From IMG/VR virus record IMGVR_UViG_3300021057_000274, positions 325,332-389,331 of that record: a stretch of 64,000 nucleotides of DNA; one strand, written 5' to 3'. Made by a program: the position numbers and the translations under genes. This document shows positions 27,914-50,007 of the stretch, in pieces (position 1 is the first letter of the stretch; each line of letters starts with the position of its first letter). The notes under the pieces are model-generated. The model saw only the letters and a list, made by a program, of their open reading frames with translations, was not told the origin of the DNA and searched no databases.

Positions 27914-29839
27914 ATGGGCATTCTCGAGTCGTTCTCCAAGGAATATCAAGAGAAGTACGCAGAAAAAGAATCAATCTCGCTCGAGGAATACCTCGAGGTC
28001 TGCAAGACCGATCCGATGTCCTATGCCTCTCCCGCGCAGAGGATGCTCAAGGCGATCGGCGAGGCCGAGATGGTCGACACCCGCTCCGACCCGCGGATGT
28101 CGAAGGTCTTCAGCAACAAGGTCATCAAGATCTATCCGGCCTTTCGTGACTTTTACGGGATGGAGGAGACGATCGAGAACATCGTCTCCTACTTCAAGCA
28201 CTCCGCCCAGGGGCTTGAGGAAGCCAAGCAAGTGCTCTACCTGCTCGGTCCAGTCGGAGGCGGTAAGTCTTCCCTCGCTGAAAAGCTAAAGGAGCTGATG
28301 GAGGTCATTCCGGTCTACGTCTTGGACGGATCCCCGGTCTTTGAAAATCCCCTCGGCCTCTTCGCGCAAAAGGAAGATTACATCCGCGCGCTCGAGCGCG
28401 ACTTCAAGATTCCGCGCACTGCGATCCGCACGATTCCCTCCCCGTGGGCGCTCGAGAAGCTGAAGGAGCACGGCGGTGACATCTCGAAGTTTCGCGTGCG
28501 CAAGATGTATCCGTCGCGTCTTCGTCAGGAGTGCATCTCGCGCGTTGAGGCTGGCGATCGCAACAATCAAGACATCTCGGCCCTGGTGGGGGAGGTCGAC
28601 ATGCGGATGGTCGGGAAGTTAGCCCAGAACCATCCATACGCCTACTCTTACTCTGGCGGACTCTGCCGCGGCAACGGCGGCATCATGGAGTTCATGGAGA
28701 TGTTCAAGGCGGACCTTGAGATTCTCAATCCGATTCTCGCGGCGACTCAGGATCGCTACTACGCTGGCACTAAGCCGATCGGTAGCATCCCCTTCGACGG
28801 CATCATCCTCGCCCACTCGAACGAGTCGGAGTGGAAGGCCTTCAAGGAGGACAAGACCAACGAGGCGTTTCTCGATCGGGTCTACATCGTCAAGGTGCCG
28901 TATTGCAAGCGCCGCACCGAGGAGATCAAGATCTACGAGAAGCTCCTCAACAACTCGGAGCTCTCTCGCGCACCCTGCGCGCCCGGAACTCTTCGCCTCT
29001 TGGCTGAGTTCTGCGTGATGAGTCGCCTGGCCGATCCGGAGAACTCGGCGCTCTACTCGAAGATGCGGGTCTATGACGGCGAGAACATCAAGAACGATGA
29101 CCCGAAGGCGAAGCCTCTTCAAGAATATAAGGATGACGCCGGAGTGAACGAGGGCATGAACGGGCTGTCGACGCGCTTCGCGTTCAAGGTTCTCTCCAAA
29201 GCCTTCAACTACCCGACGGAGGAGGTCGCGGCTGACCCGATTCACCTGATGTACATCCTCAAGCAGAGCATCGCTGAGGAGGAGTTCGAGAACGAGGGTG
29301 AGCTCTTGGAGGTGCTTGACGGCGTCCTTCACGACAAGTACCTCGAGTCGCTCGAGAAGGACATCAGGGCGTCATTTTTGGACAGCTTCCCGGAGCTCTG
29401 CCAGAACGTCTTCGACACGTACTTCTACTACGCCGACGCGTGGGTTCAGGAGCAAGACTACCGCGACCCGTCGACCGGGACGATGATGGACCGCGAGGTG
29501 CTCAACGCTGAGCTGTCGAAGATCGAGAAGCCAGCCGACATCGCGAACCCGAAGGACTTTCGTCAAGACATCACAAACTTCGTGATTCGCTACCGTGCGG
29601 CGAACAAGGGCAAGCTGCCGCGCTGGAACGAGTACGAGAAGATGCGCCAGGTGATCGAGAAGAAGGTCCTCCTCTCGACCGACGAGATCCTGCCGGTCAT
29701 CTCCTTCGGCCCGAAGCGCTCCGACAAGGAGAAGAAGGAGCACGATCAGTTCGTCGGCAAGATGAAGGCCCGCGGTTACACCGAGCGGCAGACGCGCTTC
29801 CTGTGCGACTGGTTCATGCGGAATCGCAAGGCCTCGTGA
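27914..29839 (+). CDS. prkA: PrkA/YeaG family AAA+ serine protein kinase
   Basis: FYGMEE, LLGPVGGGKSSLAE, NNQDISALVG, YSYSGGLCRGN, AHSNESEW, NEAFLDR; 641 aa. Confidence 0.93.
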   Translation: MGILESFSKEYQEKYAEKESISLEEYLEVCKTDPMSYASPAQRMLKAIGEAEMVDTRSDPRMSKVFSNKVIKIYPAFRDFYGMEETIENIVSYFKHSAQGLEEAKQVLYLLGPVGGGKSSLAEKLKELMEVIPVYVLDGSPVFENPLGLFAQKEDYIRALERDFKIPRTAIRTIPSPWALEKLKEHGGDISKFRVRKMYPSRLRQECISRVEAGDRNNQDISALVGEVDMRMVGKLAQNHPYAYSYSGGLCRGNGGIMEFMEMFKADLEILNPILAATQDRYYAGTKPIGSIPFDGIILAHSNESEWKAFKEDKTNEAFLDRVYIVKVPYCKRRTEEIKIYEKLLNNSELSRAPCAPGTLRLLAEFCVMSRLADPENSALYSKMRVYDGENIKNDDPKAKPLQEYKDDAGVNEGMNGLSTRFAFKVLSKAFNYPTEEVAADPIHLMYILKQSIAEEEFENEGELLEVLDGVLHDKYLESLEKDIRASFLDSFPELCQNVFDTYFYYADAWVQEQDYRDPSTGTMMDREVLNAELSKIEKPADIANPKDFRQDITNFVIRYRAANKGKLPRWNEYEKMRQVIEKKVLLSTDEILPVISFGPKRSDKEKKEHDQFVGKMKARGYTERQTRFLCDWFMRNRKAS

Positions 29840-30231
29840 ACGATGAAGCTCTCTCCTCTGAGGTCACTGATCTAGAGGACAGTGACCTCAGAGAATTTGA
29901 GATGCTTCTAGGCTCGAACATCCAACCGTCGCACGTCGACGTCGGCGGCGAGCATCCGGTGCAACTCGGTGAGATCGTTTGCGGCGCGCAAAAACAGAGC
30001 GGGCTCTCTGTCAAGCAGTGGAACGCGCTCCCCTCGGATGAGCGAGAGGCCTACATTCAAGATGAGATCTTCAGGCGAGTCCTCAAGAATTTTCACGATG
30101 CTCTGCAGCTAGATCCGGCACCTCGTGAGGTGTCCCCAGATCTTCTCAAGTTGATCACGATCGAGACCCGCCAAGCTTCACCTCCAGATCTTCACGGAGA
30201 AGCTCTCGAGAAGCTCAAGGCCCAGACGTGA
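29836..30231 (+). CDS. hypothetical protein
   Basis: GTGA overlap with prkA stop. Confidence 0.55.
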   Translation: MNDEALSSEVTDLEDSDLREFEMLLGSNIQPSHVDVGGEHPVQLGEIVCGAQKQSGLSVKQWNALPSDEREAYIQDEIFRRVLKNFHDALQLDPAPREVSPDLLKLITIETRQASPPDLHGEALEKLKAQT

Positions 30232-30235
30232 CGAT

Positions 30236-30264
30236 TTTACTTGAGCTCAGTTTCCTGATAAAAT
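30236..30264 (+). promoter_or_regulatory. sigma70-like early promoter
   Basis: TTTACT-N17-TAAAAT; ATG 6 nt downstream; TTGAGCT/AGCTCAA flanks. Confidence 0.75.
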
Positions 30265-30270
30265 AGCTCA

Positions 30271-30918
30271 ATGAACTTTCGCGTCATCTCTGGCGGACAG
30301 ACCGGCGCGGACCTAGCAGGGCTCTGGGTCGGTAAGCTTCTCGGTCTCGAGACCGGCGGCACTGCCCCGGGAGAGTTCATGACCCTCGACGGCCCCAAGC
30401 CTGAGTTAGGGAGAAACTTTGGCCTGGTTGAGGGACCAGCTGGCTACCGTGATCGAACCCGCACCAACGTTAACGACGCGGACGTCACCCTCATCTTCTC
30501 GAGGAACATGGCGTCGCCCGGCACCGTTCTCACCGTCAATTCAGCCATCAAGGCGCACAAACCTTATTTTGCGATCAAGGATACGAGGTCGCCCGGAGAG
30601 TCGTTGAAGAGCTTCTGGTGCGCCGACAATTGCCCTATCACCGCGCAGGCCGCGGCCCAATTCATCACTAACCTCTGTGACGTCAAGAAGCTGACTAGCG
30701 AGCTAGTGACGATCAACGTCGCTGGCAACGCTACCAAGAACGCGCAAGAAGCTTACGAGTTTGCGTTCATGGGTCTCATTCACGTCTTCATGATGCTCCG
30801 CCATGACTTGATGCCGTGGCGTGTCGGCGAGATCTCGATTTCAGACTGGCTCGTCATCGCTCGGGCGACGAAGGACCAGTACGAGCTCGCCGGGGAAGTC
30901 GCTGAGGTACTAGCATGA
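30271..30918 (+). CDS. SLOG-superfamily protein (putative MoCo-carrier/YpsA-like)
   Basis: ISGGQTGADLAG, RTRTNVNDADVTL, INVAGN. Confidence 0.78.
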   Translation: MNFRVISGGQTGADLAGLWVGKLLGLETGGTAPGEFMTLDGPKPELGRNFGLVEGPAGYRDRTRTNVNDADVTLIFSRNMASPGTVLTVNSAIKAHKPYFAIKDTRSPGESLKSFWCADNCPITAQAAAQFITNLCDVKKLTSELVTINVAGNATKNAQEAYEFAFMGLIHVFMMLRHDLMPWRVGEISISDWLVIARATKDQYELAGEVAEVLA

Positions 30919-31649
30919 ACGAGGAGATGGAAGCTGAGATCCAGGGCTCTCTTACCACCTTCCAGGTGCTGAAGGAGATGCGCACCATGACGCTCGGGCG
31001 TCTTGGAGCCCTCAGGGCGTGTCAGGTAGCCGGGCTCGAGCCGTTCTTTCACTTTTTCGACGAGTACAATCCCTCTCTCCTCGCGCCCTACCATAACGCG
31101 TACCACACGTATTGCCTGGTGCTGAATTGCTTTGAAGGAGCTTTTTACGAGAGGCTCTTCGACGACAATCGACGCATCCTCATCCTCGCGGGGCTCTTTC
31201 ACGACTTTGACCACACCGAGGGCCGCGAGGAGGACAAGGTCAACATCAGAAAGGCGATCTTCGGGTTGTCGACGGCGAAGAAGTACGCGCGAAACAATCA
31301 TTGCTTCATCACCGATGAAGAGTTTGAAGTAGCATGCGAGCTCATTCGGGTGACTAAATACCCGTATGACAGAGAGCCGGAAACTCCTCTAGAGCGCATC
31401 ATCCGCGACGCGGATCTGATGCAACCCTATGAGGAAGATCCGACGGTACTCCGGAAGCAGTTTCTGGGGCTGAAGGCTGAGATCGAGGTGCGGCGTCCCG
31501 TCATGACCAACGAGGAGTTCGGCAACGGCCTCCACGCTTGGTACATCGAGCACGCTCACTTTTACTCCCTCTGGGGTAAAGAGAAACAGCACAAGCTTCA
31601 CTACGGAGTCCGTCTGGACAACTTGAAGGAGCTTTTGGTTAGGGCGTAG
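30915..31649 (+). CDS. HD-domain phosphohydrolase
   Basis: YHNAYH...LFHDFDH...IIRDADL. Confidence 0.82.
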   Translation: MNEEMEAEIQGSLTTFQVLKEMRTMTLGRLGALRACQVAGLEPFFHFFDEYNPSLLAPYHNAYHTYCLVLNCFEGAFYERLFDDNRRILILAGLFHDFDHTEGREEDKVNIRKAIFGLSTAKKYARNNHCFITDEEFEVACELIRVTKYPYDREPETPLERIIRDADLMQPYEEDPTVLRKQFLGLKAEIEVRRPVMTNEEFGNGLHAWYIEHAHFYSLWGKEKQHKLHYGVRLDNLKELLVRA

Positions 31650-31651
31650 AC

Positions 31652-33034
31652 TTGGGCTTGACCATCGTTGATCGGCGGACTGTCACTAGTGACAAGACCA
31701 CCGAAAACCGGGCGCGGTTTCTACGCAGAATCAAGGGCTCCGTCAAGGAGCAAGTTCGGAAGCTGATCGCAAGCAGGTCGATCAAGACGCTTGACGGGGC
31801 TGGAGGCGTCATCAACATTGATCGCAAGTCGATCCATGAACCGACGATTCACCACGCTCCCGGCGGCAACGTCGACTGGGTGCTGCCCGGCAACGTTAAG
31901 TGGGTCGAGGGAGACACCATCCCGAAGGAGGAGATCTACGGCGACGGGGACGGTGACGGAGACGACGATCAGGCGGGTGACGGCGACGAGACGATCGACG
32001 AGAGCCTCGAGGTCGAGCTCACGCGCGAGGAGTTCTTGCAGTACCTCTTCGAGGATCTCGAGCTCCCTGACCTTGACGTCACCGAGGTTTCGAAGCTGAC
32101 TGAGACGATCGTCGAAAACAAGGGCTACTCCAAGGACGGCGCCCCAAATCGGCTGCACCTCTTGAGGTCGTACAAGGAGTCGCTCACTCGGCGTCTCCCC
32201 CTCATCAACTTCATTCAGGACCTCGAAAAGTTCATCGGCGCATTGAAGAGCGCGACAAATCTTGTCGACGTTCCCTCGGAGCTGATCAACGACGCCGAGA
32301 ACTTTGACGTTAAGACGGAGATGCTCGCCGTCGTTGCAGCCACCTCCCTCTCCCGCGAGCTTGAGCTCACGTCAGCGGTCCACGTGCTTCTCACGGCGCG
32401 CGTCCTCGAGGAGCCGATCTTCGACCAGATGGATCTCAGGTACCGCGCCTCACTGAGGCATGACATCCCGATCTCCCACGCGACGATGTTCATGATCATG
32501 GACGTCTCGGGAAGCATGGGTGAGGAGGAGCGCCAGGTTGCTCGCGCCTTCTTCTGGATCCTGTACAACTTCCTCAAGAAGCAATACGGTGAAGATAAGG
32601 TCGTCGACCGCTACATCATTCACACCACCGAGGCTCGTGAGGTCGAGGAGGATGAGTTCTTCGACACTCGCGCGTCAGGCGGCACGACGGTGTCGACCGC
32701 GCTCGACCTGATCTCCGAGATCATCCAGAGCGAGGGGCTTGAGGCCCAGACTAACATCTACATCGCGCAGATCTCGGACGGAGACAACGCCGAGGAGGAC
32801 AACGGTACCTGCACCGAGATTCTCGAGGACGACCTCCTGCCTAAGATCCGTTATTTTGCGTACATCCAGGTCGACGACCACAACTCGGTACCGTCCTCGT
32901 ACACCGACAAGATGTGGCGCTCGTACGAGATCGTGTCACAGAAAAATCCCAAGCTCCAGATGAAGCGCGTGTTTAGCCAGAAGGACATCTGGCACGTGTT
33001 TCGGGAGCTCTTTCAGAAGAGAGGTAGCAAGTGA
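31652..33034 (+). CDS. yeaH: YeaH/YhbH (DUF444) vWA-like protein
   Basis: IVDRR...NRARFLRR, IHEP, PGN...GD.I, LFEDLELP, MDVSGSM, SGGT.VS, QISDGDN. Confidence 0.88.
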   Translation: MGLTIVDRRTVTSDKTTENRARFLRRIKGSVKEQVRKLIASRSIKTLDGAGGVINIDRKSIHEPTIHHAPGGNVDWVLPGNVKWVEGDTIPKEEIYGDGDGDGDDDQAGDGDETIDESLEVELTREEFLQYLFEDLELPDLDVTEVSKLTETIVENKGYSKDGAPNRLHLLRSYKESLTRRLPLINFIQDLEKFIGALKSATNLVDVPSELINDAENFDVKTEMLAVVAATSLSRELELTSAVHVLLTARVLEEPIFDQMDLRYRASLRHDIPISHATMFMIMDVSGSMGEEERQVARAFFWILYNFLKKQYGEDKVVDRYIIHTTEAREVEEDEFFDTRASGGTTVSTALDLISEIIQSEGLEAQTNIYIAQISDGDNAEEDNGTCTEILEDDLLPKIRYFAYIQVDDHNSVPSSYTDKMWRSYEIVSQKNPKLQMKRVFSQKDIWHVFRELFQKRGSK

Positions 33035-33258
33035 GAGTTGAGATCAGATACTTGAAGTTCGTGTCACACGTCAATCGCCCGGTCGCGGTGGGGCAGCTCT
33101 GGTCCGTCGAGCAGAACACCGCAGGCGGCAACCAGGAGCTGATCATGGACGATCGGGTAGCGATCCTCCTCTCGATCATCAAGGAGCGCAACTACGTTCT
33201 GGTGAACTCGCAAGAGATCCTCGACCTGATCGTCAGGGTGAACGGATTCGCGGCGTGA
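33031..33258 (+). CDS. hypothetical protein
   Basis: Coupled GTGA. Confidence 0.55.
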   Translation: MRVEIRYLKFVSHVNRPVAVGQLWSVEQNTAGGNQELIMDDRVAILLSIIKERNYVLVNSQEILDLIVRVNGFAA

Positions 33259-33446
33259 AGCTTAGATTGGTGCGAGAAGAAGGCCCGACCGATGAGCCGT
33301 TCAAGTACCCAGCTTCTAAGATGTACTACTATCTCGAGATCATGAACGGAGATAAGGTGGCGGTGACTTGTGAGCTAGGAGCGGCCCAGTTTCAAAAGTT
33401 GAAGAGGCTAGGAGTCAACGTCGTCAAGGAGATCAAGTTCAGATGA
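33255..33446 (+). CDS. hypothetical protein
   Basis: Coupled on both sides. Confidence 0.55.
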   Translation: MKLRLVREEGPTDEPFKYPASKMYYYLEIMNGDKVAVTCELGAAQFQKLKRLGVNVVKEIKFR

Positions 33447-34972
33447 GCAAGCTTCTCTTCAAGTGTGACGACAACTGGACTGAAGCCATCCTCAAGCGAG
33501 CCTGGGAGGAGATCGAAAGGGTCGCGCGAGAGGAGCTCAAGGCCGACTACTACGAGCCTGAGATCCAGATCGTCAGCGCGAAGCAGATGCTGAACTCTTA
33601 CACGTCGGTCGGCATGCCGATCTACTACAACCACTGGTCGTTCGGCAAGGAGTTCGTCAACAGCGAGAAGGCCTACAAGAAGGGTCACATGAACCTCGCC
33701 TACGAGCTAGTGATCAACTCCGACCCCTGCGTCGCCTACCTGATGGAGGAGAACGACGCCCTGATCCAGACGCTGGTGATGGCGCATGCCTCGGTCGGCC
33801 ACTCCGCGGTCTTCAAGAACAACTTTCTCTTCAAGGACAAGACCGACGCGACGGCGATCGTCGATTACCTCTCGTTCGCGAAGAAGTACGTCAAGATGTG
33901 TGAGGAGAAGTACGGGGCTGCGGAGGTCGAGGTGGTGATCGACGCGTGCCACGCGATCATGCGTTACGGAGTCGACAAGTACAAGAAGCCCCGCAAGCTC
34001 AGTCCCGCGCAAGAGGAGACGCGCGCGCTCCAAAAGTTCGAGCAAGAGCTCCAGGACTACGATCACGTTTGGGAGAAGATCGGCAAGCGTCGCAAGCCAG
34101 AGCAGGCGAAGAGAGACGAGTCCTACATGCTCTCGGATCCGGAGGAAAACCTCCTCTACTTTCTCGAGAAGCAAGCTCCCCATCTCGCTGGCTGGAAGCG
34201 TGAGATCATCAGGATCGTCAGGACGATCGCTCAGTACTTCTCGCCTCAGCGCCCGACCCAAGTTGTCAACGAGGGTTACGCGACCTTCTGCCACTACTAC
34301 ATCATCAATCGACTCCACGACAAGGGACTGATCGACGGTGGCTCGATGATCGAGTTCTTCTCTGTTCACAACAACGTCGTGGCTCAGCGACGCTTGTCGT
34401 GGTTCAACCCGTACAAGCTCGGCTTCTCGATCTTTATGGACATCAAGCGGATGTGCGAAAGCCCGACGGATGAGGATCGCTTGTACTTTCCTGATCTCGT
34501 CGGCCAAAACTGGATCGAGCAGGTCAACTACGCCATGGCTAACTTCAAGGATGAAACCTTCATCCTTCAGTACCTCTCTCCTAAGGTTGCGCGTGACCTA
34601 CGGATGTTCGCTTTCAATGACCCGTCGCTCTACTCCCCCGTCTTGACGGTGACCGAGATCAGCAATGAGCGGAGCTTTCGCGAGCTTCGTGCCAAGCTAG
34701 CTGCTCAATATGCGGTCGAGAACCAAACTCCTGACATCCAGATCACGGGCGTCGACTCGAAGGGGTCACGCAAGCTGCTCCTCGAGCACTTCGTCAAGAG
34801 GAACGCGCGTCCGCTCAATCTTCAAGACGCTAAGAAGGTGGTGAAGTACGTCGCCGATCTCTGGGAGTACTCGGTCAGTCTCAAGACGATCAACTACACC
34901 GATGAGGGTGATCTCGAGACGGTTAACATCTCTGAGCTCGGAAAGTACTCAAGAAGCCTAGCTGGCGCTTAA
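33443..34972 (+). CDS. spoVR: SpoVR/YcgB family protein
   Basis: GMPIYYNHWSFGK, LAYELVINSDPC, MAHASVGH..FKNN, NEGYATFCH, NPYKLG. Confidence 0.92.
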   Translation: MSKLLFKCDDNWTEAILKRAWEEIERVAREELKADYYEPEIQIVSAKQMLNSYTSVGMPIYYNHWSFGKEFVNSEKAYKKGHMNLAYELVINSDPCVAYLMEENDALIQTLVMAHASVGHSAVFKNNFLFKDKTDATAIVDYLSFAKKYVKMCEEKYGAAEVEVVIDACHAIMRYGVDKYKKPRKLSPAQEETRALQKFEQELQDYDHVWEKIGKRRKPEQAKRDESYMLSDPEENLLYFLEKQAPHLAGWKREIIRIVRTIAQYFSPQRPTQVVNEGYATFCHYYIINRLHDKGLIDGGSMIEFFSVHNNVVAQRRLSWFNPYKLGFSIFMDIKRMCESPTDEDRLYFPDLVGQNWIEQVNYAMANFKDETFILQYLSPKVARDLRMFAFNDPSLYSPVLTVTEISNERSFRELRAKLAAQYAVENQTPDIQITGVDSKGSRKLLLEHFVKRNARPLNLQDAKKVVKYVADLWEYSVSLKTINYTDEGDLETVNISELGKYSRSLAGA

Positions 34973-47234: not shown

Positions 47235-47263
47235 TTTACTTCCGTCGAGAACTAATATATAGT
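47235..47263 (+). promoter_or_regulatory. sigma70-like promoter of the tRNA operon
   Basis: TTTACT-N17-TATAGT; leader ATG 8 nt downstream. Confidence 0.8.
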
Positions 47264-47271
47264 ATCATACC

Positions 47272-47337
47272 ATGACGAACGTCCTATCACTTAGCTTGAG
47301 CTGGTCCCTGTCCTCGTATCTCGGGGAGAGGCCCTAG
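47272..47337 (+). CDS. attenuator leader peptide MTNVLSLSLSWSLSSYLGERP
   Basis: Codons 5-18 CTA TCA CTT AGC TTG AGC TGG TCC CTG TCC TCG TAT CTC GGG match downstream tRNA anticodons; stop lies in the antiterminator strand. Confidence 0.85.
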   Translation: MTNVLSLSLSWSLSSYLGERP

Positions 47338-47386
47338 TCTCTATGTGATCTGACGAAAAGTCGACAGATTCTAGACCTAGGGCCTC
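47328..47386 (+). promoter_or_regulatory. antiterminator helix
   Basis: GAGGCCCTAGTCT (47328-40) pairs with AGA(C)CTAGGGCCTC (47373-86); inner ATCTG/CAGAT hairpin. Confidence 0.8.
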
Positions 47387-47409
47387 CAAGTGAGGCCCTA
47401 GTCGTTTTT
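47377..47409 (+). terminator. attenuator terminator
   Basis: CTAGGGCCTC-CAAGT-GAGGCCCTAG 10-bp stem plus TCGTTTTT. Confidence 0.82.
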
Positions 47410-47445
47410 GCAACGCGCTCTTTTACAATTCGGAAGCAGTACCTT

Positions 47446-47532
47446 GCCAGACTGGCGGAATCGGCAGACGCGCTAGTCTCAAAAATTAGTACCCGTGAGG
47501 GTGTCCCGGTTCGAGCCCGGGGTCTGGCACCA
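47446..47532 (+). tRNA. tRNA-Leu(CAA)
   Basis: GCCAGAC/GTCTGGC acceptor, CT-CAA-AA loop, long V arm, TTCGAG, CCA. Confidence 0.92.
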
Positions 47533-47533
47533 A

Positions 47534-47621
47534 GGATGGTTGGCAGAGTGGCCAATTGCACCTGGCTGTAAACCAGGCGCCCTGACGGGCTTCGGTGGTT
47601 CAAATCCATCACCATCCACCA
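47534..47621 (+). tRNA. tRNA-Tyr(GTA)
   Basis: CCTGG-CTGTAAA-CCAGG, long V arm, TTCAAAT, CCA. Confidence 0.93.
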
Positions 47622-47626
47622 ACATT

Positions 47627-47718
47627 GGGTCTGGTCATAAGGACGGGTGGTCCTGTCAGGAGCCTGTAAAGCTCTTCCTCAGCGAGGCACGGAGTTCGAT
47701 TCTACCCCAGACCCACCA
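47627..47718 (+). tRNA. atypical tRNA-Tyr(GTA), 8-bp acceptor
   Basis: GGGTCTGG/CCAGACCC, GGAGC-CTGTAAA-GCTCT, enlarged D arm, short bulged T stem, CCA. Confidence 0.7.
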
Positions 47719-47722
47719 AATT

Positions 47723-47812
47723 GGAGAGTGAACCGCACGGGGTGTGGCACTGCCTGGAAAGCAGTCGGGCTGGCGTAAGCTGGTCGCGGGTCGGGACCGC
47801 CGCTCTCCTCCA
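47723..47812 (+). tRNA. tRNA-Ser(GGA), 8/4 fold
   Basis: GGAGAGTG/CGCTCTCC, 6-bp D stem, ACTGC-CTGGAAA-GCAGT, GCGG/CCGC T stem, CCA. Confidence 0.85.
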
Positions 47813-47830
47813 AGTTGTAGAAGTAACGCT

Positions 47831-47919
47831 GCCCTCGTGGACAAATTGGTAAAGTTGCCAGGCTCAGAACCTGGAGCCGCGAAAGCGTATTGTCGGTTCG
47901 ACTCCGACCGAGGGCACCA
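47831..47919 (+). tRNA. tRNA-Leu(CAG)
   Basis: CCAGG-CTCAGAA-CCTGG, long V arm, TTCGACT, CCA. Confidence 0.92.
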
Positions 47920-47927
47920 ACACGAGA

Positions 47928-48010
47928 CCCCTCGTGGCAAATGGAAATTGGTACACCTACTAGATCGAGAGTCTAGGCTTTTCTCGGTTCGAATCCGAGC
48001 GAGGGGACCA
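47928..48010 (+). tRNA. atypical tRNA-Leu(GAG): short V arm, C33
   Basis: CCCCTCG/CGAGGGG, CTAGA-TCGAGAG-TCTAG, TTCGAAT, CCA. Confidence 0.65.
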
Positions 48011-48014
48011 GCAT

Positions 48015-48107
48015 GGAAGACGAACCGAGAAGGTCTCGGACTCGCCTTGAAAGCGATGGGATCGCGGCCAACCCGTGATTGGGGATCATCTCCTCCGTCT
48101 TCCGCCA
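48015..48107 (+). tRNA. tRNA-Ser(TGA), 8/4 fold
   Basis: GGAAGACG/CGTCTTCC, CCGAGA-AGG-TCTCGG D arm, CT-TGA-AA loop, T loop ATCATCT, GCCA. Confidence 0.82.
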
Positions 48108-48111
48108 GTAT

Positions 48112-48195
48112 GCGAGCGTGGTGGAATGGTATACACACGTGCCTTAGGAGCACGTGCCGCAAGGTATGTGGGTTCGACTCCCACCGCTCGCACCA
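48112..48195 (+). tRNA. tRNA-Leu(TAG)
   Basis: CGTGC-CTTAGGA-GCACG, TTCGACT, CCA. Confidence 0.93.
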
Positions 48196-48206
48196 AAGGA
48201 GACGAC

Positions 48207-48404
48207 ATGAACCTCAAGTCTAGAGAAGCAGGTGAGCTGATCCAGGGCATCCAGGTAAACGAGTCTCGCAGGGTGAAGTACTCGTCCTGGTACCACGCGA
48301 TCGCTCGAAACAGAGGAATCACGATCAGGACGAGGAGGGTGAGCGATGACGAGATCATCGTCACCCGGATCGAACCCAAGGATGACGAACTAGTCAGGGA
48401 CTAG
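48207..48404 (+). CDS. small protein inside tRNA cluster
   Basis: AAAGGAG SD; 65 aa; 3' end overlaps tRNA-Ser(CGA). Confidence 0.6.
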   Translation: MNLKSREAGELIQGIQVNESRRVKYSSWYHAIARNRGITIRTRRVSDDEIIVTRIEPKDDELVRD

Positions 48405-48467
48405 CGCTGCCTCGAAAGCAGATGGACTCGGAAACGGGCTGGGGGTCGGGACCTCCGTCATCCGCCA
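48380..48467 (+). tRNA. tRNA-Ser(CGA), 8/4 fold
   Basis: GGATGACG/CGTCATCC, CTAGTC-AGG-GACTAG, CT-CGA-AA loop, GCCA. Confidence 0.85.
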
Positions 48468-48573
48468 AGGAAGCAAGCAGGCGCTGGCAACGGCGTTTGG
48501 AGACTCATGACCTTTTTGACGTAGCTTTTGCATGCTGCATCAGACGAGCGACCTCTACTTAGGAGCCTTTATC

Positions 48574-48847
48574 ATGAACGACACCGAGCTGCTGAACGCG
48601 ATCAACAAGTACAGGTTGCATCCGCTCCCCTCAAGCTTTCTGGGTGGGGAGTACTGGAGGTGTCTTTGGACACCCTCGAGTTCCAGCACCAGCTGAGGGA
48701 TTTCCGAACAAAACGAGAAGCGTCGAGGTAGTCGGGTTCGGACGAACGGTCAGAGCAGCCGTTCGTGACTGTGTCGAGAAGATGAGAGCGACGATCGCCG
48801 ACGGAGGTAGGATGGCGATGTTCGACGGCACTGACGATGGAGAGTGA
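48574..48847 (+). pseudogene. split small gene (+1 frameshift at CCC-T 48673-76); pseudogene or programmed frameshift
   Basis: AGGAG SD; MNDTELLNAINKY... stops at 48696; the +1 frame continues ...GRTVRAAVRDCVEKM to 48847. Confidence 0.45.
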
Positions 48848-48934
48848 ACCGGGGAGGCCCTGGGACCGCCTGCTAAGCGGATCGTCTGGGAGCGCGAGCT
48901 CTTGGATGCGGATCGAGACCGCCGCTCTCCGCCA
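48839..48934 (+). tRNA. tRNA-Ser(GCT), 8/4 fold
   Basis: GGAGAGTG/CGCTCTCC, CCGGGG-AGG-CCCTGG, CT-GCT-AA loop, GCGG-ATCGAGA-CCGC, GCCA. Confidence 0.85.
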
Positions 48935-49046
48935 GAGCAAGGTGAAATTTCGCGGCGAGAACCAAAGAGCGTGACCGGCTGCTACCGGGCTACGCATCGA
49001 ATCGCGGTAACGAGGATCCTAGCAGGGAATTCCCTCACCTTGCTCT
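48934..49046 (+). ncRNA. unidentified structured RNA
   Basis: 12-bp terminal stem AGAGCAAGGTGA/TCACCTTGCTCT filling the gap between two tRNAs. Confidence 0.5.
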
Positions 49047-49051
49047 ACCTT

Positions 49052-49138
49052 GCCTGCGTGGCGGAACTGGTATACGCGCAACGTTGAGAGCGTTGTTCCC
49101 TAACGGGATTGAGGGTTCGAGTCCCTCCGTAGGCACCA
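49052..49138 (+). tRNA. tRNA-Leu(GAG)
   Basis: CAACG-TTGAGAG-CGTTG, long V arm, TTCGAGT, CCA. Confidence 0.93.
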
Positions 49139-49145
49139 AGACGGA

Positions 49146-49241
49146 TGAGTGGGGGAATGGGCAATCCCTGGGTTAATCCCTGTGCGAGTCATGTCGCGCT
49201 GCCTGCCAGTAGGTGGAATTGTAGGTTCGAGTCCTATCTCA
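49146..49241 (+). ncRNA. degenerate or multi-arm tRNA-like element
   Basis: Canonical T arm GTAGG-TTCGAGT-CCTAT, D-like arm, three internal hairpins, weak acceptor, no CCA. Confidence 0.4.
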
Positions 49242-49269
49242 GAAAGTACTGGCCGCATCGTCTTATCTC

Positions 49270-49343
49270 GGGTCGTTGGTGTAGTGGCAGCACAGGAGCC
49301 TCCAAAACTCTTAGTCAGGGTTCGATTCCTTGACGACCCGCCA
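49270..49343 (+). tRNA. tRNA-Trp(CCA)
   Basis: GGGTCGT/ACGACCC, CT-CCA-AA loop, TTCGATT, GCCA. Confidence 0.88.
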
Positions 49344-49405
49344 GCTGTGTCCAGTGCTAAAATACATCGGTACCGCAACGGGCGAAGGGTACCGAGCAGT
49401 TCAGT

Positions 49406-49480
49406 AGGGGATTGGTGTAGTGGTAACTACGCGGAGCTCCAAACTCCGAGTCGGGGGTTCGATTCCCTCATCCCTTGCCA
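49406..49480 (+). tRNA. tRNA-Trp(CCA), second copy
   Basis: AGGGGAT/ATCCCTT, CGGAG-CTCCAAA-CTCCG, GCCA. Confidence 0.9.
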
Positions 49481-49481
49481 A

Positions 49482-49599
49482 GCACATCACGATGGTGGCG
49501 AGTCGTCCCAGCTCGTCTGGGCGCAGCCGAGGTGAGATTCCTCGGTGGCATTTCCGGTTGTAGCCCACCCGCTCGCGCCAAACCGGCTAGGTGATGTGT
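49482..49599 (+). ncRNA. unidentified structured RNA
   Basis: CACATCAC/GTGATGTG closing stem; internal CCCAG/CTGGG and CCGAGG/CCTCGG hairpins. Confidence 0.45.
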
Positions 49600-49605
49600 G
49601 GTTCT

Positions 49606-49684
49606 GGGTCGGCAGCTCTTGGCAACTGCGTGGGACCCTTCCCAAGGGAAACGCGACGAGGGTTCGATTCCCTTCCGATCCACC
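49606..49684 (+). tRNA. atypical tRNA-Gly(CCC)
   Basis: GGGTCGG/CCGATCC acceptor, CCC-TTCCCAA-GGG anticodon arm on an extended GCGT/ACGC stem, GAGGG-TTCGATT-CCCTT. Confidence 0.55.
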
Positions 49685-49903
49685 GGGGCAGAAGGCCGAA
49701 GGAAGGCCACTTGTAAAACACGGACGAGCTCCAGTAAAATGGGCGTCTCCATCAAGAACGTCGTCGAGTACGGTTAACAGATTGCACCGGGCGAAGCTCC
49801 TGCCAAGGGGTTAGCAGGGAAGCAGGTTTCCAACGGCGGCGTTGCCTGAAGTAATGACTCAGGTCGGAGGCGTTTGCGGGTTCGACTCCCGCCTGCCCTA
49901 CCA
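49685..49903 (+). ncRNA. 219-nt tRNA-like RNA (acceptor + T arm + CCA with a large structured insert)
   Basis: GGGGCAG/CTGCCCT-ACCA; GCGGG-TTCGACT-CCCGC; 49741-50 pairs with 49866-75; 49757-66 pairs with 49834-43. Confidence 0.6.
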
Positions 49904-49924: not shown

Positions 49925-50007
49925 GCCGGCGTGGCTAGGACAAATTGGGACAGTCACTGGGCTTAAACCCCAGGCTCGTGAGGGTTCGAATCCCTCCGTC
50001 GGCACCA
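49925..50007 (+). tRNA. atypical tRNA-Leu(TAA): short V arm
   Basis: GCCGGCG/CGTCGGC, CTGGG-CTTAAAC-CCCAG, TTCGAAT, ACCA. Confidence 0.8.

What the first reader, a model, noticed from the sequence alone, without database searches (positions are those of the whole stretch)
47723..48934. All four Ser tRNAs (and the second Tyr) use a non-canonical 8/4 cloverleaf with degenerate T-loops
Seen: Ser GGA, TGA, CGA and GCT each have an 8-bp acceptor stem, a 4-bp T stem, an AA linker, a 6-bp D stem with a 3-nt loop (AGG/GGG), and T-loops GTCGGGA, ATCATCT or ATCGAGA instead of TTCRANY. The Tyr at 47627 also has an 8-bp acceptor. Established: 8/4 tRNA-Ser folds have been reported as rare variants. Inference: a whole isoacceptor set in this fold may escape enzymes that recognise the normal elbow or acceptor geometry. 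Standard annotators may miss or mis-score these genes.
Basis: partly seen in the sequence, partly recalled or inferred. Interest (0 to 1): 0.7.

Follow-up and report, generated by a model that had tools for sequence, protein, structure and literature searches.

The report
Phage serine tRNAs with 8/4 cloverleaf
A 389-kb soil phage encodes its only four serine tRNAs, and one extra tyrosine tRNA, in a rare "8/4" cloverleaf that standard tRNA finders miss; the genes look real and usable, but this fold was already described in phage tRNA clusters in 2017, so this is a new example and not a new kind.

Summary
At 47723-47812, 48015-48107, 48380-48467 and 48839-48934 (+ strand) lie four tRNA genes. 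Each has an 8-bp acceptor stem, an AA linker, a 6-bp D stem with a 3-nt loop, a long variable arm, a 4-bp T stem, G73 or U73, and an encoded CCA. The anticodons are GGA, TGA, CGA and GCT. ARAGORN and the Rfam tRNA and tRNA-Sec models miss all four. They are the only convincing serine tRNAs in the 389-kb phage, which has tRNAs for the other 19 amino acids.

The fold is supported by compensatory changes among the four genes and across about 80 relatives. Those relatives sit in other phage contigs, in bacterial long tRNA arrays and in cultured phages, where they are unannotated. This is the (8/4) tRNA-Ser class of Mukai et al. 2017 (allo-tRNA group), so it is a new member of a known kind.

They most likely work as ordinary serine decoders charged by host SerRS. 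The phage has no SerRS, and the 12-bp acceptor/T helix is kept.

The second Tyr belongs to a recurring 8/4 tRNA-Tyr type with a conserved 7-8-nt linker. The main text of the 2017 paper does not mention that type.

The parts
47723..47812 (+). tRNA-Ser(GGA), 8/4 fold, U73, CCA encoded, T loop GTCGGGA, D loop GGG
   Evidence: Parse; MFE fold; model R1 96.6 bits; missed by ARAGORN and Rfam
48015..48107 (+). tRNA-Ser(UGA), 8/4 fold, G73, CCA encoded, T loop ATCATCT, D loop AGG
   Evidence: R1 96.2 bits
48380..48467 (+). tRNA-Ser(CGA), 8/4 fold, G73, CCA encoded, T loop GTCGGGA, D loop AGG
   Evidence: R1 87.2 bits
48839..48934 (+). tRNA-Ser(GCU), 8/4 fold, G73, CCA encoded, T loop ATCGAGA, D loop AGG, 26-nt variable arm
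   Evidence: R1 93.8 bits
47627..47718 (+). Second tRNA-Tyr(GUA). It has an 8-bp acceptor, a 7-nt linker TCATAAG, a 6-bp D stem with a TGGT loop, a 6-bp anticodon stem, a 4-bp T stem with one bulged A on the 3' strand, the canonical T loop TTCGATT, A73 and CCA.
   Evidence: Rfam tRNA-Sec 27.9 bits, below the cut-off of 47; the same architecture occurs in three other phage contigs with compensatory changes
47446..49480 (+). Surrounding cluster of canonical 7/5 tRNAs on the same strand: Leu-CAA 47446-47532, Tyr-GTA 47534-47621, Leu-CAG 47831-47919, Leu-TAG 48112-48195, Leu-GAG 49052-49138, Trp-CCA 49270-49343 and 49406-49480
   Evidence: ARAGORN; Rfam RF00005 47-60 bits

Best explanation
The four sequences are genuine serine tRNA genes of the (8/4) class, part of the allo-tRNA group of Mukai et al. 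2017. They form the complete serine isoacceptor set of a 389-kb soil phage that otherwise carries tRNAs for the other 19 amino acids.

Shown here: the fold, the anticodons covering all six Ser codons, G73/U73, the long variable arm, the encoded CCA, the absence of any other convincing Ser tRNA, and the absence of a phage SerRS.

Inferred: the genes are transcribed with the neighbouring Leu, Tyr and Trp tRNAs and trimmed by host enzymes. Host SerRS charges them, because it reads the variable arm and the discriminator base and not the anticodon or the way the 12 bp are split. EF-Tu and the ribosome accept them because the stacked acceptor/T helix is 12 bp, as in ordinary tRNAs. They then decode Ser codons in phage mRNAs.

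The 8/4 fold itself is best read as a trait of a tRNA gene lineage that circulates in phage tRNA clusters and horizontally transferred bacterial tRNA arrays. It is not a property of host housekeeping sets.
For: - Structure and covariation. On 74 distinct relatives 94% of cells pair, against 40-48% when slid, and the 8th acceptor pair occurs as GC 47, AU 9, UA 6 and CG 3.
- Only these four match the model in the whole genome.
- ARAGORN finds tRNAs for 19 amino acids but no class-II Ser, so the four fill exactly the missing amino acid, one gene per anticodon.
- Ser makes up 6.8% of codons in long ORFs, and all six Ser codons are used.
- The phage has no class-II aaRS core PF00587, so charging must be by the host enzyme. 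It does encode a PF01743 nucleotidyltransferase.
- Of 65 strictly parsed relatives from other contigs, 64 carry Ser anticodons only.
- Other elements carry full sets of four (L034, L040, L062) or mix 8/4 with 7/5 so that each anticodon occurs once (L030, Caulobacter phage CcrPW). This implies the two folds are interchangeable in decoding.
- The elbow nucleotides are conserved, with one tertiary-pair swap.
- Literature: allo-tRNAs with 8/4 or 9/3 structures inserted Ser efficiently in E. coli, and SerRS accepts 8/5, 9/4, 8/4 and 9/3 substrates (PMC5389517; PMC7609411).
- Bacterial copies lie in long tRNA arrays beside complete canonical sets. This fits the horizontally spread L-arrays of PMC8421152.
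Against: - There is no expression, processing or charging evidence for these four genes. One soil metatranscriptome holds two identical short contigs, but only over the Trp part of the cluster, and DNA carry-over cannot be excluded. No RNA run was listed for the Ser genes.
- Three of the four have a non-Watson-Crick 27:43 pair. All four lack T54, and two have G54/G58, so elbow stability is assumed and not shown.
- The host is unknown.
- Mukai et al. found that some allo-tRNA groups (the UAU type) were inactive in E. coli.
Confidence: 0.8

Rival explanations
1. The 8/4 geometry, with altered T loops, is selected because it makes the phage's Ser (and Tyr) tRNAs poor substrates for tRNA-targeting nucleases or modification enzymes that read normal acceptor/T-arm geometry. 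These enzymes could be host defences or the phage's own weapons against host tRNA. This would add to, and not replace, a decoding role.
For: - In the two bacterial genomes checked (a Sphingopyxis isolate and a Faecousia MAG), the 8/4 Ser genes are supernumerary beside a full canonical 7/5 set of four.
- They sit in phage clusters or mobile arrays.
- All four Ser genes have a non-T54 T loop, against 4 of the 48 ARAGORN-called tRNAs of the same phage.
- From general knowledge, phage tRNAs can counter host tRNA nucleases.
Against: - Nothing here tests sensitivity to any enzyme.
- The anticodon loops, which are the usual nuclease targets, are standard.
- U55, C56 and the D-loop GG that form the elbow are conserved.
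- The phage's other tRNA genes (48 found by ARAGORN) are drawn as ordinary 7/5.
- Other phages mix 7/5 and 8/4 Ser isoacceptors in one set.
- No RtcB-type repair ligase is present.
Confidence: 0.12
2. They are decaying pseudogenes or tRNA-like elements with a role outside translation, such as processing signals, recombination or attachment sites, or regulatory RNAs.
For: - The cluster also holds several irregular tRNA-like sequences (47928-48010, 49606-49685, 49816-49903, 49925-50007).
- Mukai et al. found inactive allo-tRNA(UAU) groups associated with mobile elements.
Against: - The acceptor, D and T stems are fully paired, with compensatory changes.
- There is exactly one gene per Ser anticodon, with G73/U73 and CCA.
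- No other Ser tRNA exists in a phage that covers the other 19 amino acids.
- 64 of 65 relatives keep Ser anticodons, which only selection on decoding explains.
Confidence: 0.05
3. They are selenocysteine-type tRNAs, or missense tRNAs charged with something other than Ser.
For: The D arm (6-bp stem, tiny loop), the 8-bp acceptor and the long variable arm resemble tRNA-Sec.
Against: - The acceptor/T helix is 12 bp, not 13.
- The anticodons are Ser sense anticodons, not UCA.
- There is no RF01852 match even at E<=10.
- There is no G3:U70.
- The discriminator fits SerRS.
Confidence: 0.02

Closest known systems
(8/4) tRNA-Ser of phage tRNA gene clusters, within the allo-tRNA group (Mukai et al., NAR 2017, PMC5389517)
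   Same: 8-bp acceptor plus 4-bp T stem (12 bp in all), long variable arm, G73 or U73, extended D stem with a very small loop, Ser anticodons, and a location inside a phage tRNA cluster.
   Different: - The D loop here is 3 nt (AGG/GGG), whereas allo-tRNAs have a tetraloop. The paper says only the (8/4) tRNA-Ser with Y20 are also classed as allo-tRNA.
- The anticodon stem is 5 positions, with 27:43 often unpaired, not lengthened.
- The phage's His tRNAs are ordinary 7/5, one with G-1:C73. They are not the (8/4) tRNA-His that accompanies 8/4 Ser in the alpha-proteobacterial phages of that paper.
- The host here is unknown (soil).
Bacterial tRNA-Sec (Rfam RF01852; 8/5)
   Same: 8-bp acceptor, 6-bp D stem with a small loop, long variable arm, and a SerRS substrate.
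   Different: tRNA-Sec has a 13-bp acceptor/T helix, a UCA anticodon and a 6-bp anticodon stem. The four Ser genes give no RF01852 match, and Tyr2 scores only 27.9 bits against a cut-off of 47.
selC* tRNA-Cys and minor (8/4) tRNA-Sec with one bulged T-stem nucleotide, and the '(8/4) tRNA with an extra loop (E-loop)' of soil polycistrons (Mukai et al. 2017)
   Same: Tyr2 has an 8-bp acceptor, a 4-bp T stem interrupted by one bulged nucleotide, and an extra 7-nt single-stranded stretch between the acceptor and D stems.
   Different: In Tyr2 the bulge is on the 3' strand, whereas A51a is on the 5' strand. Tyr2 has a GUA anticodon and A73 (Tyr identity), not Cys, Sec or GCU/U73. This resemblance rests on the text of the paper only; the figures were not available.
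Long horizontally transferred tRNA arrays (L-arrays; Santamaria-Gomez et al., NAR 2021, PMC8421152)
   Same: Bacterial homologues of these 8/4 genes lie in arrays of 20-27 tRNA genes within 8 kb and add supernumerary genes to a complete housekeeping set.
   Different: The present cluster is in a phage genome. The text passages retrieved from the L-array paper do not mention an 8/4 fold.
Canonical bacterial class-II tRNA-Ser (7/5; Rfam RF00005)
   Same: Same anticodons, long variable arm, G73, and presumably the same synthetase.
   Different: Canonical tRNA-Ser has a 7-bp acceptor, a 5-bp T stem, U8, a 3-4-bp D stem with a large loop, and a TTCRANY T loop. RF00005 does not match the four genes.

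Membership tests
(8/4) tRNA-Ser / allo-tRNA group (Mukai 2017) | 8-bp acceptor stem stacked on a 4-bp T stem (12 bp in all), with 7/5 not possible | tested here: met
   8/8 and 4/4 pairs in all four genes. The 8th pair and all T-stem pairs covary across relatives.
(8/4) tRNA-Ser / allo-tRNA group (Mukai 2017) | Long variable arm and a G73 or U73 discriminator (SerRS identity) | tested here: met
   Variable arms of 18-26 nt with 6-10-bp stems; discriminators U73, G73, G73, G73.
(8/4) tRNA-Ser / allo-tRNA group (Mukai 2017) | tRNA-Sec-like D arm (long stem; tetraloop with Y20 in allo-tRNAs proper) | tested here: inconclusive
   The D stem is 6 bp with covariation, but the loop is 3 nt (AGG/GGG) without Y20. 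Relatives with AGGT tetraloops exist. The published consensus figure could not be read.
(8/4) tRNA-Ser / allo-tRNA group (Mukai 2017) | Serine anticodon (this separates (8/4) tRNA-Ser from the missense or nonsense allo-tRNAs) | tested here: met
   Anticodons GGA, TGA, CGA and GCT. 64 of 65 strictly parsed relatives carry Ser anticodons.
(8/4) tRNA-Ser / allo-tRNA group (Mukai 2017) | Serylation by SerRS and use in translation | not testable with these tools
   Only indirect support: no phage SerRS, and published E. coli assays on other allo-tRNAs.
Bacterial tRNA-Sec (RF01852) | 13-bp acceptor/T helix (8/5), UCA anticodon, score at or above the Rfam cut-off | tested here: not met
   The helix is 12 bp and the anticodons are Ser sense anticodons. 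No RF01852 match at E<=10 for the four Ser genes.
Canonical tRNA (RF00005, 7/5) | 7-bp acceptor, 5-bp T stem, score at or above 29 bits | tested here: not met
   No RF00005 match at the gathering score or at E<=10. A 7/5 drawing leaves a C:C or U:C mismatch.

The most novel reading that the evidence does not exclude
The 8/4 architecture of tRNA-Ser, and of two tRNA-Tyr types that the main text of the 2017 paper does not mention, marks a mobile-element tRNA lineage. That lineage would be kept because it is orthogonal to tRNA-directed nucleases or modification enzymes that act on the host's 7/5 class-II tRNAs. A phage or array could then keep Ser and Tyr decoding running while canonical tRNAs are being destroyed.
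Probability: 0.12. Interest if true: 0.7.

Novelty: new member of a known kind. Interest (0 to 1): 0.3.

Why it matters
**Annotation.** Phage and tRNA-array inventories are systematically short of serine, and sometimes tyrosine, tRNAs. In all 22 cultured-phage GenBank records that matched an 8/4 Ser gene, the matched stretch carries no annotated feature. The hosts include Ruegeria, Rhodobacter, Phaeobacter, Caulobacter, Stenotrophomonas, Mycobacterium and Rhodococcus. Claims that a phage lacks Ser tRNAs, or that Ser is the tRNA least often found in arrays, may therefore partly reflect detection failure.

**Biology.** A complete isoacceptor set in this fold, with no canonical back-up, argues strongly that 8/4 tRNAs serve routine decoding.

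**Testing.** The cultured phage-host pairs identified here make the open question directly testable: why do mobile elements keep a separate 8/4 lineage?

Tried and rejected
- Relatives of the phage through the 304-aa protein next to the cluster: none in IMG/VR.
- The S49 protease gave only distant cultured-phage hits, so no close relative was available for synteny.
- (8/4) tRNA-His as in Mukai's alpha-proteobacterial phages: not present. Both His genes are 7/5, and one has G-1:C73.
- Phage-encoded SerRS (PF00587) and RtcB (PF01139): absent.
- Stop-codon recoding, suggested by an amber-suppressor tRNA: no signal. Standard-code ORFs cover 78-99% of each 20-kb bin (the low bin holds the main tRNA cluster). 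Making TAG a sense codon lengthens ORFs about as much as doing so for TAA.
- RNA evidence: one metatranscriptome covers only the Trp part of the cluster, and no RNA run was listed for the Ser genes.
- The idea that 8/4 mirrors host housekeeping tRNAs: rejected for the two genomes checked, which both have full canonical sets.
- Flanking proteins: nothing tRNA-related. The hits were a Lar-like protein, an endolysin/peptidase and unknowns.
- The ARAGORN 'Ser(tga)' at genome 81695-81767: rejected as a Ser tRNA (5/7 acceptor, no variable arm).
- Promoter and terminator scan: nothing above the shuffled expectation except one strong hairpin with a T run at 47377-47401, just upstream of the cluster.
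Full report
**Where the window lies.** The window is the last 64 kb (325332-389331) of a 389,331-bp IMG/VR virus record rated 98% complete. The two DNA runs that hold it are soil metagenomes. GC content is 55-61%. The window also carries helicase, AAA ATPase, S49 protease, SLT lysozyme and a PrkA-DUF444-SpoVR block. No close cultured relative was found.

**The observation.** ARAGORN finds 7 tRNAs in the window, and the Rfam tRNA model finds the same 7. None of them is a Ser tRNA. A permissive Rfam scan of 47300-49700 (E up to 10) still gives no tRNA or tRNA-Sec match over the four candidates.

- an 8-bp acceptor, an AA linker, and a 6-bp D stem with a 3-nt loop (GGG or AGG);
- one linker base, an anticodon stem, and a 7-nt loop with anticodon GGA, TGA, CGA or GCT;
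- a variable arm of 18-26 nt, a 4-bp T stem, and a T loop (GTCGGGA, ATCATCT, GTCGGGA, ATCGAGA);
- the acceptor 3' strand, U73 or G73, and CCA.

Free-energy folding without constraints recovers this cloverleaf. A 7/5 drawing fails in all four, because the base before the T stem cannot pair with the C of the 8th acceptor pair.

On the alignment of the four, 96.4% of cells pair, against 40-51% with slid partners, and 12 of 28 pairs carry compensatory changes. The D stems are almost entirely different in sequence. A covariance model built from them (R1) scores the four at 87-97 bits in the whole phage genome, and the next hit is a Trp tRNA at 27 bits. A simple geometric descriptor finds the same four and no other tRNA-like hit.

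**Role in the phage.** ARAGORN on the whole genome gives 48 tRNAs covering 19 amino acids, plus an amber suppressor. Serine is the one amino acid missing. The only exception is a 73-nt 'Ser(tga)' call at 81695-81767, which has a 5/7 acceptor and no variable arm and is not found by Rfam.

The four 8/4 genes supply one gene for each Ser anticodon needed to read all six codons. Ser makes up 6.8% of codons in long ORFs, with TCG and AGC the most used.

The phage has no class-II synthetase core PF00587, so it has no SerRS. It has a PF01743 nucleotidyltransferase and no RtcB. The 48 ARAGORN-called tRNAs are drawn as 7/5. Of these, 37 have a TTC.A T loop and only 4 have A54, whereas all four Ser genes lack T54.

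**Relatives.** A fixed pattern made of the positions invariant among the four matched 26 IMG/VR contigs. R1 finds 78 hits in them, often 3-5 per contig. The same pattern matched 37 stretches of GTDB genomes, which gave 54 R1 hits.

Under a strict parse (perfect 8-bp acceptor, perfect 4-bp T stem, D and anticodon stems present), 65 sequences remain. Of these, 64 have the Ser anticodons GCT, GGA, CGA or TGA, and one has GTA. They also share the AA linker, AGG/GGG D loops and G73 more often than U73. About half have A54 or G54 T loops, and ATCGAGA is among the commonest.

On 74 distinct sequences 94% of cells pair, against 40-48% when slid, and every pair covaries. The 8th acceptor pair occurs as GC 47, AU 9, UA 6 and CG 3. 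The 27:43 position is unpaired in more than half, so the mismatch seen in three of the window's genes is a family trait.

The nucleotides that build the elbow are kept. Of 82 distinct 8/4 sequences examined (the window's four included), 77 have U55-C56 together with a GG in the D loop. Two genes of Caulobacter phage CcrPW have C in place of the second G, together with G56. This reads as a swap of the 19:56 tertiary pair. The T loops are therefore variant at positions 54 and 58-60 and are not degenerate.

**Bacterial copies.** In bacterial genomes the genes sit in long tRNA arrays, for example 26 tRNAs in 8 kb in Chondromyces apiculatus DSM 436 and 20-27 in three MAGs. In Clostridia MAGs they sit at the head of short tRNA operons.

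Two genomes were checked in full.
- Sphingopyxis sp. JAI128 has four dispersed canonical 7/5 Ser tRNAs (CGA, TGA, GGA, GCT, all with a TTCGAAT T loop) in addition to its 8/4 cluster.
- A Faecousia MAG likewise has four Ser tRNA genes (TGA, GGA, CGA, GCT) detected by RF00005 and ARAGORN, in addition to an 8/4 Ser(GCT). Their 7/5 fold was not parsed by hand.

So the 8/4 genes are supernumerary there. This matches the horizontally transferred L-arrays described in PMC8421152.

**Cultured phages.** The 8/4 Ser gene of Ruegeria phage RpAliso matched 22 cultured-phage records. These include Roseobacter-group phages, Caulobacter phiCbK-like phages, Stenotrophomonas DLP_6, Mycobacterium Bigswole and Rhodococcus REQ2. 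Every match lies under no annotated feature.

R1 and parsing confirm the following:
- three R1 matches (53-81 bits) in RpAliso, the two best shown as 8/4 alignments;
- three in CcrPW;
- three in CcrRogue;
- one perfect 8/4 gene (and a second, weaker match) in DLP_6;
- one in Bigswole, where only 7 of the 8 acceptor pairs form.

Some sets are mixed. CcrPW has three 8/4 genes plus one 7/5 Ser(TGA). IMG/VR contig L030 has three 7/5 genes plus one 8/4. In both, each anticodon occurs once, which argues that the two folds are interchangeable in decoding.

**What is already known.** Mukai et al. 2017 (PMC5389517) reported tRNAs with 8/4 and 9/3 acceptor branches. They stated that certain bacteria and their phages use the 8/4 structure for Ser and His tRNAs. 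They found (8/4) tRNA-Ser in tRNA gene clusters of phages, proteobacteria and rumen Clostridia. They also showed that allo-tRNAs insert Ser in E. coli, and noted that SerRS accepts 8/5, 9/4, 8/4 and 9/3 substrates (review PMC7609411). The present genes meet the defining features of that class, apart from the 3-nt D loop.

**How it most likely works.** The four genes are ordinary serine decoders. They are transcribed with the neighbouring class-II tRNAs and matured by host enzymes. Host SerRS charges them through the variable arm and G73/U73. EF-Tu accepts them because the acceptor/T helix is still 12 bp. These steps are inferred.

Direct RNA evidence is lacking. One soil metatranscriptome holds two identical contigs at 49155-49323 and 49452-49612, which is the Trp part of the cluster. 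Nothing covers the Ser genes, and DNA carry-over cannot be excluded. No RNA run was listed for the Ser genes.

It fits the restriction of the class to phage tRNA clusters and accessory gene sets in everything examined here. However, nothing tests it. The elbow nucleotides and the anticodon loops are standard, the rest of the phage's tRNAs are 7/5, and mixed sets exist.

**The second Tyr.** The gene at 47627-47718 has these features:
- an 8-bp acceptor and a 7-nt linker TCATAAG;
- a 6-bp D stem with a TGGT tetraloop and a 6-bp anticodon stem (GUA);
- a short variable hairpin;
- a 4-bp T stem if one A on the 3' strand is bulged (otherwise 5 positions with two mismatches);
- the canonical T loop TTCGATT, A73 and CCA.

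Rfam's tRNA-Sec model gives 27.9 bits, below its cut-off of 47.

A pattern scan followed by a geometric filter found the same architecture in three other IMG/VR contigs (L211, L199, L201). They share a conserved linker (U)CA(A)UAAG, all stems are fully paired, and there are many compensatory changes. L211 has the bulge at the same place.

A second 8/4 Tyr type also exists. It has an AA(A) linker and, in the IMG/VR members, an ATCGNAA T loop (TTCGATC in CcrRogue). It occurs in three IMG/VR contigs and, unannotated, in Caulobacter phage CcrRogue. The main text of Mukai et al. names Ser, His, Cys and Sec but not Tyr. The supplement could not be read.

**Verdict.** The structure is real and under selection. 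The genes are very probably functional Ser tRNAs, and the fold is a published class. The added value here is threefold: a complete 8/4-only Ser set in a huge phage, evidence that such genes go unannotated in many cultured phages, and the recurring 8/4 Tyr types.

Noticed in passing
window 47627-47718; L211:2423-2514, L199:1897-1985(-), L201:1820-1910: The second Tyr belongs to a recurring phage tRNA-Tyr type. It has an 8-bp acceptor, a conserved 7-8-nt linker (U)CA(A)UAAG, a 6-bp D stem with a UGGU loop, a 6-bp anticodon stem, a 4-bp T stem (with a bulge on the 3' strand in two of four members) and A73. The main text of Mukai 2017 does not mention it.
   Followed up: partly
L025:5340-5422(-), L029:2252-2340, L041:10125-10206(-), L101:2286-2370 (Caulobacter phage CcrRogue JX100814.1): A second 8/4 tRNA-Tyr(GUA) type has an AA(A) linker and A73. 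The T loop is ATCGNAA in the three IMG/VR members and TTCGATC in CcrRogue. It is unannotated in the cultured phage.
   Followed up: partly
window 47928-48010 and 49925-50007: Two homologous 83-nt tRNA-like genes have Leu anticodons (GAG, with C33; and TAA), A73, CCA, normal acceptor, anticodon and T arms, only a 6-nt variable region, and an enlarged D region (7-nt linker, 3-bp stem). The TAA gene would be the phage's only tRNA-Leu(UAA). RF00005 gives it 28.2 bits, just under the cut-off. Short tRNA-Leu genes without a variable arm are also called by ARAGORN or annotated in the arrays and phages examined.
   Followed up: partly
window 49606-49685, 49816-49903, about 49195-49245: Further tRNA-like pieces lie in the cluster. 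The first has good acceptor and T arms but no proper anticodon loop (Rfam tmRNA model 23.9 bits, below the cut-off). The second has a 9-nt anticodon-type loop and one acceptor mismatch. The third is an isolated T-arm-like hairpin.
   Followed up: no
genome 123181-123255 (outside the window): A well-formed tRNA with a CUA (amber suppressor) anticodon scores 65 bits with RF00005. A crude ORF-length comparison shows no sign that TAG is recoded.
   Followed up: partly
GenBank OR257569.1 13289-13374 and two more; OP186293.1; KT870145.1; MH015255.1; MN602268.1; MT270409.1; MH588545.1; JX100814.1; KU682439.2 106110-106197; NC_054715.1 34073-34160: 8/4 tRNA-Ser genes sit in unannotated gaps of the tRNA clusters of cultured phages of Ruegeria, Rhodobacter, Phaeobacter, Caulobacter, Stenotrophomonas and Mycobacterium. 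Five records were checked with the model. The rest rest on the BLAST match alone.
   Followed up: partly
L098:790-879, L101:783-869 and 875-964 (Caulobacter phages CcrPW, CcrRogue): These genes are annotated as 'tRNA-Lys' and are 87-90 nt long. The two CcrRogue genes were read: they have a long variable arm, U73 and the anticodons CTT and TTT. Their shape is class-II, Ser-like. Whether they are charged with Lys or Ser is open.
   Followed up: no
genome 81955-82029 (Glu), 82392-82465 (Lys), 82705-82780 (Met), 86119-86192 (His): Four otherwise ordinary 7/5 tRNAs of the phage also have A54 T loops (ATCGAAA, ATCATTA, ATCGAAA, ATCGATA). ATCATTA, like ATCATCT of Ser(UGA), looks like a swapped 54:58 pair.
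   Followed up: no
window 27914-34972: The phage carries a PrkA kinase, DUF444 (YeaH-like) and SpoVR gene block, normally a bacterial stress or sporulation-associated trio.
   Followed up: no
window 49155-49323 and 49452-49612: A soil metatranscriptome run holds two contigs identical to spacer-plus-Trp-tRNA stretches of the cluster. This hints at transcription of a precursor, although DNA carry-over is not excluded.
   Followed up: partly
window 48207-48404: A 65-codon ORF between Leu(TAG) and Ser(CGA) overlaps the first 25 nt of the Ser(CGA) gene. It has no PHROG match and is probably not a gene.
   Followed up: partly
window 47377-47401: A 10-bp GC-rich hairpin followed by a T run lies just upstream of the first tRNA of the cluster, and a promoter-like site lies at 47235-47263.
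   Followed up: no
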